NCBI GenBank assembly: GCA_904063045.1
Contig: CAJFCJ010000028.1
Location: 496,001 to 560,000, forward strand
Length of the DNA stretch: 64,000 bases
Direction: 5' to 3'
Origin: Dimorphilus gyrociliatus
Taxonomy: Eukaryota; Animalia; Annelida
Below, piece after piece: positions 1-3,326 of the stretch. The stretch's first letter is position 1. The number at the start of each line of letters is the position of its first letter. A program made the translations under genes and the position numbers. The notes beneath the pieces are model-generated. The model saw only the letters and a list, made by a program, of their open reading frames with translations. It made no database searches and was not told the origin of the DNA.

Positions 1-1885
1 AAGAAGTGCGATAAAAGAGACAAAGACTAAAGATGGGATTGGCGTATTTCTTTTAACGTGAACCATTCCCATCACTTCTACCATGTGTCCCTCTCTTCCA
101 GCAACATAGAAGAGTCTATACAGGAGAGAAAAAGGATTCGATTTTTAAATTCCCCTAGTTAGCCAATTCTTTAATAATCATTATCAAATAGAATCAATTA
201 AAGAATCATTAAACCTTCCGGCTGCAAACATGGAACCATTTATTGAACCAAAAGCGGAAGCGGCAATGAGTAGACTTATTAAGACCATTTTATATCTGAT
301 TTCTCCTTCGAAAGTTTTTAGAAAATCCTAAAAGTAAATCATTAAAATCACAAATTATAAAAATTAAGAAAATATCTTGGAGCGTTAATTTTCCAATGGG
401 AAAATTAACATAATCAACAACAATTAAAGCAAAGAAATAATCAAATATAGAAGCATCTTATCAAAAAAAATACGGGAAAGCAATCTGTAATATTTCATCA
501 TCCTGAAGCGTGAGATTTGAAGATAAGCTTGTTTTAAAACGTATTATGTACCTGCTAGATGAAAACATTGTACCGTTGGCGGCACCAAATGTTGAAAAGG
601 CTACGAAGATTGGTATCATCCATTTTACCGGTCTAATAACTGCTTCCGCCCATGTCTGTTTAATTTCTAACAGTCTAACTAACCGCCCAACATAATATTT
701 ATTACATTAGAAATGTATACTTACAATAGCAACAGCCGTTGAATCCAGTAGTTGAGCCGGAGTCATTACAGTAAAGTAACTAATATTTACCAAAAGATAA
801 CATACAGTAACCAACGGAATACCAATTAAGATTGAACGAGGTAGATTACTGAGATTAACGGTCAAGATTAATTTTGTTTTATAAACTTGTCCCAGTTGTT
901 GTAAAATTTATCTACTTACACGTTTGGATTAATAATCTCTTCTGTTACGTAATTTAAATTATTCCATCCATCGTAGGCCCACATGCCGTTGTAAATACCA
1001 ATAGCAATTTTACCCACTTGTTTATTTGTACCCGTAAATCCAGTCGCCAAAATAGCTGTTTGACCTGATTAGAGAATGAAAAAATTAAGATTTTCAATAC
1101 TGTTTTAATTAATAGTCAAACCTTGGCCAAGTCTTACAATTCCTCCAATAATAATTACAGCGATGGCTATTAGTTTTGCAACTGTAAAGACAACTTGAAT
1201 TCTTGCTGCTAACTTGACGGAAAAGCAGTTGACAGCAGTAAGAAGAACTATTTTTTAAATTAATATTACGTATAGTTTGCTGTAAATAATATTTATAGCG
1301 ATTACTTATAACTAGAGCAGCCATGATTTTCTTATTTGGAGTTGGAGGCTCACCGCAACCGTCGTCAAAAAATGGTACCATTACGTATTCGGCGCAAGTT
1401 AGAGATATGATAGCAATCGATGACGGCTTTATTAACAACATTGAAACCCAATTAAAAAGAAATGCCGGTATTCTACCAATTGATCTATATTTCTCTTTTC
1501 CTCCATAGCATTCTAGTAAATATGCATATTCGCATCCCGACTTTGGAATCATAGTTCCAAGTTCGGCTAGTGAAAGTGCTCCAAACATTGATATTATTCC
1601 ACAGATAGACCAAGATATAAGAGACAATCCTACTGATCCAGATCCCCTAGTTACTCCCTTGGGGGAGATGAAAATTCCCGATCCTAATAGGTTTTAAAAA
1701 TCCGTTAATCCGTGCTAGATAAGAAACATGTTAAGAAACCTTTTTTTACCTATCATAGTTCCAACAATTAAAGAAATTCCAGCAACTAATCCAACTCTTT
1801 TCTTCAATCCTACTTTAGAATTAGATGATGCAATTGACACACCATCGTCCCCGTTTGAACCAATATTTCTCTCTCGAACGCTCAT
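1..1885 (-). CDS. SLC7A9: b(0,+)-type/L-type amino acid transporter light chain (SLC7 family); 3' part runs off the window
   Basis: ATG 1885. Exons 1750-1885, 1306-1683, 1122-1247, 920-1064, 725-848, then 552-655 OR 215-327, then <1-115; all GT-AG and phase-consistent. Motifs [71 protein letters not shown] are SLC7 hallmarks, closest to b0,+AT as I recall them. Confidence 0.93.
215..327 (-). CDS. SLC7 alternative TM8 exon B ([38 protein letters not shown])
   Basis: 113 nt, cttttag acceptor and gtttaa donor, phase 0 to 2, stop-free. Homologous to exon A (FGxxNGxMF...R). Joining A to B shifts the frame. Confidence 0.8.
552..655 (-). CDS. SLC7 alternative TM8 exon A ([35 protein letters not shown])
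   Basis: 104 nt, aacag acceptor and gtacat donor, phase 0 to 2. Confidence 0.9.
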
Positions 1886-3326
1886 GTTGCTGTAGCTGCC
1901 TTCACGATTGCACTCAGAATGAAGAAGCCGATCCAATTTATACCAGTTAAACTTTAAGCGTAACCGTTGGATGCGACAGAATAAAATATACTCAACGAAC
2001 TTTATCAAAGTTCAATATAACAATTATCTTTAATTTTTAATAGTTATAATCCACTTAAATGTTGGCCTAATCGTTGAAACATGTGTTGGGATAACGTAGA
2101 AGTTAAGAAACGTTGCTAGGTGGCACTACCTTGTATTTAAGACAATCTTAAAAGCTTTTTAAGGCACTAATAAATAGAAACAAGATAAAGTTGAATGTTT
2201 AATTTGAGAAATTGAAGTAGGCAATCGGAATCTGTAACAAGATTTAAGTCTATACAGTGCACGCTATATATATATTGCAGTATTTTGAAGAAATATGCTG
2301 TAGAGATAGCCTACAAAGTATAGTATTTTATTGATAATGTTTAAAAAAGACCTAGTTGTTAGTTGAACCAATTACTTAGATTATTAAATATGGGGCGTGG
2401 ATACTTAAAAATATTATTGTTATCAATAGAAGATAGGATATTTATGTGCTGAAAAAAAACTATACAGATAAAATATGTAGATTCGATGCATTATTATCAA
2501 GCTTAACATCATTAGACAGTCAATTTCACAGTGTCGTAGCTCTGATTAAAATGATTCAGCATTTTTGTAGTTCATCGTTTTGTCATAATTAGTAATACAG
2601 AGTCTTTGTCCGACATAATTATGGTATCATATTTTCATCTTAAGAACTTGTAAAGAAGTGGAAAGAGTTGAAAGAAAAGTAAATCTCCCACAGAAGATTA
2701 TAATTTGGATATATACGAAATATAGAAAAGCGTAAATTATTTCTTTCTATTTTCATCACATAAAGTAGAAATATATATGTTTATATATAAGAATATACAT
2801 ATATATTAAAACTTATATAGCTGTTTAGTATTACATAGCAAGCAACTGTATAAACAATCGATAATGGTATTGAATATTTTTATTAGATTTCTTTTTTTTT
2901 CTTTTTTTTATTAAAAAAAAAACTATTTATTTTCCTTCTAATATTATTTTATAAGTTATAAGTAAAAATTTCATAGAAATTGTATACTGAATTGAAGAGA
3001 TGGCAAGATTTGTGTGAAATGATGAGAAAGAGAAAGTCTTTGTGTGTGTGTGTATGTGTGTGTGTGCACAAATTAGAGAATAGATATGTCTAGAGATGAA
3101 GTAGGAAAGGAAGACAAGAGATCAAGAGAGAGAGAGAGAGAGTCAGACACACAGACAGAAAGAAAGATAGTAGGTAAATGAAAGGAGTACGGAGAAAAAA
3201 GAAAAGAAAACGAAAGTAAATATAGCATGATTGACATAGAGAAATTCTTCTATTACTACTTGCATACTCTTTTGTTTATCTTTTTTTTCAAACCTAGTTA
3301 ATTAAGATTAAATATTGATTAATTAG

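What the first reader, a model, noticed from the sequence alone, without database searches (positions are those of the whole stretch)
215..655. Mutually exclusive duplicated exons swap the substrate-lining TM8 helix of an SLC7 transporter
Seen: two homologous exons in tandem, A (552-655, ...[16 protein letters not shown]) and B (215-327, ...[16 protein letters not shown]). Both are phase 0 to 2 with canonical splice sites; using both shifts the frame and skipping both removes TM8, so one must be chosen. Established: TM8 lines the binding site of LAT-fold transporters (LAT1 C335, S338, S342). At the 338 and 342 positions exon A has A/T as in b0,+AT and exon B has S/S as in LAT1. Inference: one gene makes two transporters of different substrate selectivity by exon choice.
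Basis: partly seen in the sequence, partly recalled or inferred. Interest (0 to 1): 0.78.

Follow-up and report, generated by a model that had tools for sequence, protein, structure and literature searches.

The report
Two swappable TM8 exons in worm transporter
A b(0,+)AT-type amino-acid transporter gene of the tiny marine worm Dimorphilus gyrociliatus carries two alternative copies of the exon for a pocket-lining helix; both are kept by selection and only one can be used at a time. The layout is also present in crabs and another worm, and RNA data so far show only one copy in use.

Summary
On the minus strand, a b(0,+)AT-like SLC7 light-chain gene (exons 1885..1) holds two tandem homologous exons: A (655-552, 104 nt) and B (327-215, 113 nt). 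Both run from phase 0 to phase 2 and have AG/GT splice sites. Using one keeps the frame; using both or neither breaks it.

- **Exon A:** a spliced transcript contig confirms every junction and uses A.
- **Exon B, RNA evidence:** no assembled RNA shows B.
- **Exon B, indirect evidence:** the deposited gene model (501 aa) uses B. A related species keeps B at the same length and with the same splice sites, inside introns that no longer align. Its dN/dS is 0.11 (P about 1e-4 against neutrality). B also keeps every nearly invariant TM8 residue.

The design is not unique. The Owenia orthologue has three tandem TM8 exons. The crab Eriocheir also has three, and RefSeq isoforms there use two of them alternately. 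A second swappable cluster (TM2-3) occurs in Owenia, Lingula, crustaceans and a scorpion.

I found no paper describing this. Verdict: a real, probably functional pair of mutually exclusive exons, and a new member of a known kind. This scan has already noted similar exon clusters in other transporter genes of this genome.

The parts
1750..1885 (-). Exon 1 (ATG at 1885), N-terminus and start of TM1
   Evidence: Gene model. Junction 1750|1683 confirmed by a spliced contig of run X2.
1306..1683 (-). Exon 2: TM1 to TM3 and the loop carrying the conserved Cys that links to the heavy chain
   Evidence: Pfam AA_permease_2, E 4e-10. Matches xCT, b(0,+)AT and LAT1 chains at E 1e-30 to 1e-24. Junctions confirmed.
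1122..1247 (-). Exon 3 (TM4-TM5)
920..1064 (-). Exon 4 (TM6 region)
725..848 (-). Exon 5 (TM7), the shared upstream exon; its donor is GTAAGT
552..655 (-). Exon A: the canonical TM8 exon, 104 nt, phase 0 to 2, b(0,+)AT-like
   Evidence: Used in a 6338-nt spliced contig, with junctions 725|655 and 552|115. Matches b(0,+)AT TM8 at E 3e-7. Amino acids are 100% identical in the relative, with dN 0.
328..551 (-). Intron between A and B (224 nt; the other introns of this gene are 57-71 nt)
   Evidence: It cannot be aligned with the relative (50% identity, 63 gap columns).
215..327 (-). Exon B: a divergent alternative TM8 exon, 113 nt, phase 0 to 2
   Evidence: Used by the deposited gene model P0247. 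The relative keeps it at the same length, with AG/GT and no indels; dN/dS 0.11, P 1.1e-4. It keeps the nearly invariant TM8 residues. AlphaFold models it as a helix with block-mean pLDDT 80-95. It is not seen in RNA contigs.
1..115 (-). Shared downstream exon (end of TM8, loop, TM9 start); the gene runs off the window
   Evidence: The rest of the gene lies in L003.

Best explanation
The gene encodes the Dimorphilus gyrociliatus orthologue of the b(0,+)AT / 'sobremesa' light chain of heteromeric amino-acid transporters. One exon, covering the TM7-TM8 loop and most of TM8, was duplicated in tandem. Both copies are 2 mod 3 in length. An mRNA with exactly one copy is therefore in frame. An mRNA with both or neither carries premature stops and would probably be removed by nonsense-mediated decay.

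Isoform A (canonical TM8, b(0,+)AT-like) is the major form. Isoform B replaces TM8 with a divergent helix that lacks the usual Trp and Pro and has Ala/Ser/Ser instead of Thr/Ala/Thr at the pocket positions. It is probably a minor or cell-type-restricted form. Its transport properties probably differ, either in substrate selectivity or in kinetics.

Shown: the anatomy, use of exon A, the frame logic, purifying selection on B, and the same layout in other protostomes.
Inferred: splicing of B into mRNA, nonsense-mediated decay of the wrong combinations, and any functional difference between the isoforms.
For: - **Gene model and frame logic:**
- **Junctions:** all constitutive junctions and the A junctions are in a spliced contig.
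- **Homology:** A and B are homologous.
- **Family:** the protein is closest to solved b(0,+)AT (E 2e-147). The isoform-B model has mean pLDDT 90.4, with TM8 modelled as helix 313-348, and matches solved b(0,+)AT, LAT1 and y+LAT1 chains at TM-score 0.81-0.87.
- **Annotation:** the deposited protein P0247 contains exon B. The annotation pipeline weighted transcript assemblies tenfold over ab initio models and protein alignments (PMC7854359).
- **Relative's genome (L004/L005):** it has exon B at 113 nt with AG and GT. Nucleotide identity is 75% with no gaps, the same as constitutive exon 5. The flanking introns are 50-58% identical, have many gaps and differ in length.
- **Selection on B:** dN 0.153, dS 1.37, ratio 0.11. 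The probability of 12 or fewer non-synonymous changes out of 28 under neutrality is 1.1e-4.
- **Conserved residues:** B keeps G311, S327, F329, G330, N333, G334, F337 and R341.
- **Same exon elsewhere:** with the same boundaries and phase, it is triplicated in Owenia and in Eriocheir. In Eriocheir, RefSeq isoforms X1 and X7 use different copies.
- **Role of TM8:** TM3, TM6, TM8 and TM10 hold the substrate side chain, and LAT1 C335/S342 sit in TM8 (PMC8399266).
Against: - No RNA contig covers 141-490 in either available run. One of them is a transcriptome in which the A isoform has depth 467.
- No protein in the 5.8-billion collection other than P0247 carries a B-like segment, whether among proteins of 275-877 aa or fragments of 44-140 aa.
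- Transcripts recovered from two sources use A.
- B evolves faster than its neighbours: dN 0.15, against 0 for A and 0.06-0.075 for the flanking exons.
- B has lost the Trp and Pro found in most orthologues.
- The B-containing annotation could still be an ab initio choice.
- From my own knowledge of the assembler, not tested here: contig assembly collapses short bubbles such as an A/B pair onto the more abundant path. Absence from contigs is therefore weak evidence.
Confidence: 0.72

Rival explanations
1. Exon B is a silent relic. Its ancestor was an alternative TM8 exon, as in Owenia, but in Dimorphilus it is no longer spliced in. The gene makes only isoform A, and the deposited B model is an annotation artefact.
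For: Only A is seen in RNA contigs and in a relative's transcript. No other B-like protein exists in the collection. B evolves faster than every neighbouring exon and lacks the Trp and Pro.
Against: - dN/dS is 0.11, with no indel or stop across 113 nt, while the flanking introns are scrambled.
- Both splice sites are kept in the relative.
- All nearly invariant TM8 residues are kept.
- Introns in this genome have a median length of 66 bp (PMC7854359), so unused DNA would be expected to shrink.
- Protein alignments and the dominant transcript both favour A, so a model with B suggests that B had some support of its own (inference).
Confidence: 0.13
2. Exon B acts mainly as a regulatory 'poison' exon. 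Including it together with A shifts the frame and sends the mRNA to decay, which tunes the amount of transporter. It does not produce a second protein.
For: A plus B gives immediate stop codons. B was not found in stable assembled transcripts, as would be expected for decay targets.
Against: Selection acts on the protein reading of B. There is an excess of synonymous changes in the TM8 frame, and the family's invariant residues are retained. A poison exon does not need either. In Eriocheir, homologous TM8 copies are used as coding alternatives in RefSeq isoforms.
Confidence: 0.07
3. Both isoforms are made, but they differ in kinetics, gating or heavy-chain/lipid coupling and not in substrate selectivity. 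This would resemble CAT-2A versus CAT-2B, which differ in affinity and capacity for the same substrate.
For: TM8 takes part in the TM1-TM5-TM8 coordination that drives the transport cycle (PMC8399266). SLC7A2 isoforms made from mutually exclusive exons differ in arginine affinity and capacity (PMC12714141). Much of the A/B difference lies in the loop and in the first turns of TM8.
Against: The pocket positions equivalent to LAT1 335, 338 and 342 differ between A and B. Mutations at the equivalent TM8 position in bacterial homologues broaden selectivity (PMC8399266).
Confidence: 0.3

Closest known systems
Alternative TM8 exons of b(0,+)AT-like ('sobremesa'-type) genes in malacostracan crustaceans, as annotated in RefSeq (Eriocheir, Procambarus, Panulirus, Homarus, Oratosquilla)
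   Same: Same orthologous gene family. The same exon is affected: isoforms differ at residues 304-339 or 304-326 of the worm protein, depending on species. Intron positions and phase are the same (104 or 107 nt, 0 to 2). The copies are in tandem, and one copy type lacks the Trp and Pro and has Ser at the LAT1-342 position.
   Different: Crustaceans have three copies plus a second cluster at TM2-3. Exon B shows no closer similarity to the crustacean Pro-less type than to any other TM8, so shared origin is not shown. I found no paper describing these clusters.
Owenia fusiformis orthologue (P0002, locus L001)
   Same: Also an annelid. It has three tandem 104-nt TM8 exons with AG/GT and the same phase; the annotated protein uses the middle one.
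   Different: All three Owenia copies resemble exon A (51-69% identity to it over the best tblastn match). None resembles B in particular. Owenia also has six TM2-3 copies and two TM4-5 copies, which Dimorphilus lacks. Use of the extra copies in RNA was not checked.
SLC7A2 CAT-2A / CAT-2B (mammals)
   Same: An SLC7 family transporter in which mutually exclusive exons give two isoforms with different transport properties (PMC12714141).
   Different: It belongs to another subfamily: CATs have 14 TM helices and no heavy chain. The event is an independent duplication at a different exon (exons 7 and 8), and the known effect is on arginine affinity and capacity.
Tandem-duplicated exon substitution in membrane proteins generally
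   Same: Homologous adjacent exons of the same phase that swap one helix or segment. These events are reported as rare, mostly ancient and functionally important (PMC9741552, PMC5740500).
   Different: Nothing in principle; this would be one more case. Here exclusivity can be explained by reading frame alone, and no conserved intronic pairing elements were seen.

Membership tests
SLC7 LAT-type light chains of heteromeric amino-acid transporters (b(0,+)AT-like) | Amino-acid permease domain with the 12-TM LeuT/APC fold | tested here: met
   Pfam AA_permease_2. AlphaFold model with mean pLDDT 90.4. TM-score 0.81-0.87 to solved b(0,+)AT, LAT1 and y+LAT1.
SLC7 LAT-type light chains of heteromeric amino-acid transporters (b(0,+)AT-like) | Closest sequence relatives are b(0,+)AT (SLC7A9) orthologues | tested here: met
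   Best solved match is human b(0,+)AT at E 2e-147, ahead of xCT, LAT1 and y+LAT. Its closest full-length relative, the Owenia protein, retrieved database relatives that are named b(0,+)-type amino acid transporter 1 or sobremesa, and the worm protein is among them at 62% identity.
SLC7 LAT-type light chains of heteromeric amino-acid transporters (b(0,+)AT-like) | Conserved Cys in the TM3-TM4 loop that forms the disulfide with the heavy chain | tested here: met
   C155 is a nearly invariant column. It aligns with the Cys of the 'GC-KPP' stretch of human b(0,+)AT.
SLC7 LAT-type light chains of heteromeric amino-acid transporters (b(0,+)AT-like) | Association with an SLC3 heavy chain, and exchange of cationic/neutral amino acids and cystine | not testable with these tools
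   Needs co-expression and uptake assays.
Mutually exclusive exons from tandem exon duplication | Adjacent exons that are homologous to each other and encode the same protein segment | tested here: met
   A versus B at E 1e-7. Both lie between exon 5 and the next exon and align to TM8.
Mutually exclusive exons from tandem exon duplication | Same phase and usable splice sites; one copy keeps the frame, both or none break it | tested here: met
   104 and 113 nt, both 2 mod 3, both AG...GT. The four splice combinations were translated.
Mutually exclusive exons from tandem exon duplication | Both copies maintained by selection in related species | tested here: met
   A: dN 0. B: dN/dS 0.11, no indels, splice sites kept, introns unalignable. 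This rests on one relative's genome only; L004 and L005 are identical in this region.
Mutually exclusive exons from tandem exon duplication | Each copy observed spliced into mRNA, never both together | tested here: inconclusive
   A is observed (in a relative). B is not observed in contigs of two runs or in any assembled protein. It appears only in the deposited gene model. Contigs cannot show absence, and no raw reads were available.

The most novel reading that the evidence does not exclude
The b(0,+)AT/sobremesa gene of protostomes may carry an old, combinatorial set of swappable exons on two substrate-pocket regions: TM2-3 and TM8, plus TM4-5 in Owenia. One gene would then encode a repertoire of heteromeric-transporter light chains, up to 6 x 2 x 3 = 36 in Owenia, with different substrate preferences. 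Dimorphilus, despite genome compaction, would keep a minimal two-way TM8 switch whose B helix has diverged well beyond any TM8 in the orthologues compared here. The literature searched here does not describe this.
Probability: 0.4. Interest if true: 0.62.

Novelty: new member of a known kind. Interest (0 to 1): 0.45.

Why it matters
TM8 is one of the helices that hold the substrate side chain in LAT-fold transporters. A natural, selection-maintained swap of that helix within one gene amounts to a ready-made helix-exchange experiment. It could be used to study what sets selectivity or kinetics in the b(0,+)AT/LAT family, whose human members underlie cystinuria and are drug targets.

The same exon, and the TM2-3 exon, are multiplied in crabs, a brachiopod and another annelid. 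Invertebrates may therefore diversify this transporter by splicing, where vertebrates use gene paralogues (LAT1, LAT2, y+LAT, xCT, b(0,+)AT). Retention of the pair in one of the most compact annelid genomes argues that the second isoform matters to the animal.

Tried and rejected
1. **RNA support for exon B.** The single read-laying run had only contigs available. They show A and nothing over B.
2. **B-like segments in the 5.8-billion protein collection.** Among full-length proteins only the worm's own model matched. A second search for short fragments found no candidate.
3. **Orthology of B.** B scores about equally, and low, against every TM8 type, including the crustacean Pro-less type and all three Owenia copies. 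Its origin stays open.
4. **Pairing elements that could enforce exclusivity.** Only short, imperfect AT-rich inverted repeats turned up. Nothing is conserved, because the introns do not align with the relative. The frame rule is sufficient.
5. **Further hidden duplicates in the rest of the gene.** None were found in L003 or L004.
6. **Capitella as a third annelid.** Its closest gene has fused exons and no duplicates.
7. **Literature on exclusive exons in b(0,+)AT, SLC7A9 or sobremesa.** Nothing relevant.
8. **Exon B alone against solved structures.** Only a weak xCT match (E 0.4). This is uninformative because the query is only 37 residues.
9. **Look-up of the Eriocheir isoform X7 locus.** It failed, so I used isoform X1 instead.

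Full report
**What is in the sequence.**
Reading the minus strand of window 1-2100 gives a clean eight-exon gene model:
- E1 1885-1750
- E2 1683-1306
- E3 1247-1122
- E4 1064-920
- E5 848-725
- exon A 655-552
- exon B 327-215
- a last exon, 115-1, that runs off the window

All introns are GT-AG. Exon A is 104 nt and exon B is 113 nt. Both begin in phase 0 and end in phase 2. Translating the four possible combinations shows that A alone and B alone stay open to the window edge. A plus B runs into stops at once, and skipping both shifts the frame. The two peptides align at 12 of 30 identities, pairwise E 1e-7.

**What the gene is.**
The window comes from contig CAJFCJ010000028.1 of assembly GCA_904063045.1, which is Dimorphilus gyrociliatus (PMC10212961). 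The largest exon hits Pfam AA_permease_2 and solved light chains of heteromeric amino-acid transporters.

The full deposited protein, P0247 (501 aa), is closest to human b(0,+)AT at E 2e-147, ahead of xCT, LAT1 and y+LAT. It keeps the loop cysteine that bonds the heavy chain. Database relatives found with its closest full-length relative, the Owenia protein, are named b(0,+)-type amino acid transporter 1 or, in arthropods, sobremesa. An AlphaFold model of P0247 has mean pLDDT 90.4. It superposes on solved b(0,+)AT, LAT1 and y+LAT1 at TM-score 0.81-0.87.

**RNA evidence.**
Only two public runs held this stretch, both as assembled contigs. One run, of unrecorded library type, holds a 6338-nt spliced contig (depth 467). 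That contig confirms every predicted junction and joins 725|655 and 552|115, so it uses exon A and skips B. A coral metatranscriptome run also holds spliced pieces of the upstream exons. Neither run has any contig over 141-490. A full-length transcript from a relative (P0270, locus L006) also carries exon A.

Searches of the 5.8-billion protein collection for a B-like segment found only P0247 among proteins of 275-877 aa. They found nothing among fragments of 44-140 aa. Use of exon A is therefore shown, and use of exon B is not.

Two cautions apply. The tool itself states that contigs show presence, not absence. To my knowledge, the assembler behind these contigs also collapses short bubbles onto the more abundant path. 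An A/B pair forms exactly such a bubble, so a minor B isoform would be lost.

**Indirect evidence that B is a working exon.**
- **The deposited gene model uses B**. The genome paper built its models with EvidenceModeler, giving transcript assemblies weight 10 and giving ab initio models and protein alignments weight 1 (PMC7854359). Protein alignments and the dominant transcript both favour A, so a model with B hints at a B transcript. This is inference.
- **A related species keeps B.** Genomic contigs L004 and L005 carry both exons. In a genomic alignment, the introns on either side of B are 50-58% identical, have many gaps and differ in length. B itself is 75% identical with no gap, the same 113 nt, and has AG and GT in place. 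Constitutive exon 5 is also 75% identical.
- **The substitutions in B are mostly synonymous.** dN is 0.153 and dS is 1.37, a ratio of 0.11. Under neutrality, the chance of 12 or fewer non-synonymous changes among 28 is 1.1e-4. Exon A has dN 0.
- **B keeps the conserved TM8 residues.** In a 103-protein alignment, B keeps every column of this segment that is at least 90% conserved: G311, S327, F329, G330, N333, G334, F337 and R341. One Val is replaced by Ile.
- **The model folds B as a helix.** The AlphaFold model places the B segment in a long helix (313-348) with block-mean pLDDT 80-95. The alignment behind that model is dominated by canonical TM8 sequences, so this is weak support.

Against this, B evolves about twice as fast as the flanking exons (dN 0.06-0.075). 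It also lacks the Trp and Pro that most orthologues have.

**The same design elsewhere.**
- **Owenia fusiformis** (closest full-length relative, P0002, locus L001). It has three tandem TM8 exons of 104 nt, each with AG and GT and the same phase; the annotated protein uses the middle one. The locus also has six tandem copies of the TM2-3 exon and two of the TM4-5 exon.
- **Malacostracan crustaceans.** RefSeq isoforms of the orthologue differ in two blocks only: residues about 80-172, and 304-339 or 304-326 of the worm protein. The second block is the A/B segment.
- **The crab Eriocheir sinensis.** I confirmed three tandem TM8 exons (107, 107 and 104 nt, same phase) and two tandem TM2-3 exons. 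Isoforms X1 and X7 use different copies. The crustacean second TM8 type also lacks the Trp and Pro and has Ser at the LAT1-342 position.
- **Lingula** has four TM2-3 copies and one TM8 exon. **Capitella** has no duplicates.
- **Daphnia and a scorpion** vary only in the TM2-3 block, and the insects sampled do not vary at TM8.

Exon B is not measurably closer to the crustacean second type, or to any Owenia copy, than to any other TM8. I cannot say whether the A/B split is old or arose within dinophilids and then diverged quickly.

**How it probably works.**
Exclusivity follows from reading frame, which is shown by translation. Removal of the wrong combinations by nonsense-mediated decay is inferred. 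I saw no conserved intronic pairing elements.

On function, a review of LAT structures states that the substrate side chain points towards TM3, TM6, TM8 and TM10. It also states that LAT1 Cys335 and Ser342 in TM8 correspond to the main substrate-attracting residue of AdiC. Mutations at that position in bacterial homologues broaden selectivity, and TM1-TM5-TM8 coordination drives the cycle (PMC8399266).

By index arithmetic on the gap-free matches, exon A has Thr/Ala/Thr at LAT1 positions 335/338/342, exactly as b(0,+)AT does. Exon B has Ala/Ser/Ser, and Ser/Ser at 338/342 is what LAT1 has.

Whether this changes which amino acids are carried, or only affinity and rate, cannot be decided here. 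The second outcome would match CAT-2A versus CAT-2B (PMC12714141). It is notable that the two recurrent swappable blocks in this gene family, TM2-3 and TM8, are both pocket-forming regions.

**Novelty and score.**
Tandem-duplicated, mutually exclusive exons that swap a membrane helix are a known class (PMC9741552, PMC5740500). An SLC7 example, SLC7A2, is well characterised. The same TM8 swap is already visible in RefSeq isoforms of crustacean orthologues. I found no paper describing it for b(0,+)AT, SLC7A9 or sobremesa, but the searchable library is limited.

Earlier notes of this scan list similar exon clusters in SLC6, ABCC4, MRP1, SGLT, SLC26 and SLC44 genes of this same genome. The phenomenon is therefore common here. 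I rate this a new member of a known kind, of moderate interest. The wider pattern across protostomes is the more interesting lead.

**Limits.**
- No raw reads were available, so B splicing is unproven.
- Purifying selection rests on one relative whose species I could not identify.
- The LAT1 numbering rests on index arithmetic and the literature. I did not inspect a LAT1 alignment directly.

Noticed in passing
L001:26267-27374 and L001:31843-32865 (Owenia fusiformis orthologue): Two young tandem arrays: 86 nt x 12.9 copies at 94% match, and 103 nt x 9.9 copies at 97% match. Each unit consists of the 3' end of an intron plus the first part of a coding exon (the TM2-3 exon and the 'NLPRSIMIAIPLVT...' TM7 exon). 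Each array sits directly upstream of the real exon, so it presents many repeated candidate acceptor sites.
   Followed up: partly
L001:15622-27592, L008:7982-12606, L009:75556-78807: A second tandem exon cluster covers the end of TM2, TM3 and the heavy-chain Cys loop. It has six copies in Owenia, four in Lingula and two in Eriocheir, where RefSeq isoforms use them alternately. Isoforms of Daphnia and a scorpion also vary there. Dimorphilus has a single, fused exon 2 instead.
   Followed up: partly
window:758-1644: A coral metatranscriptome run (X1) holds correctly spliced pieces of this worm gene, two of the three contigs at 99% or higher identity. The worm or a very close relative was evidently present in that coral sample.
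   Followed up: no
window:2949-3093: A short CA/TG dinucleotide repeat shows up as His-Thr and Cys-Val repeat ORFs just upstream of the gene.
   Followed up: no
P0151-P0155, P0180 (fish); P0153, P0156, P0160 (rotifers): Several b(0,+)AT-like database proteins of 600-900 aa in fish and rotifers are much longer than the family norm. They may be fused tandem genes or models that string duplicated exons together. The fish ones carry a TM8 with Ser in place of the usual Pro and an 'SAFGSLNG' motif reminiscent of exon B.
   Followed up: no
L003:410-1559 and L003:7424-8397; L004:3833-7377: The gene's neighbours are a tetraspanin gene upstream and a Casc1_N/galactosyltransferase-domain gene downstream on the opposite strand. 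The relative keeps the downstream neighbour in the same position.
   Followed up: no
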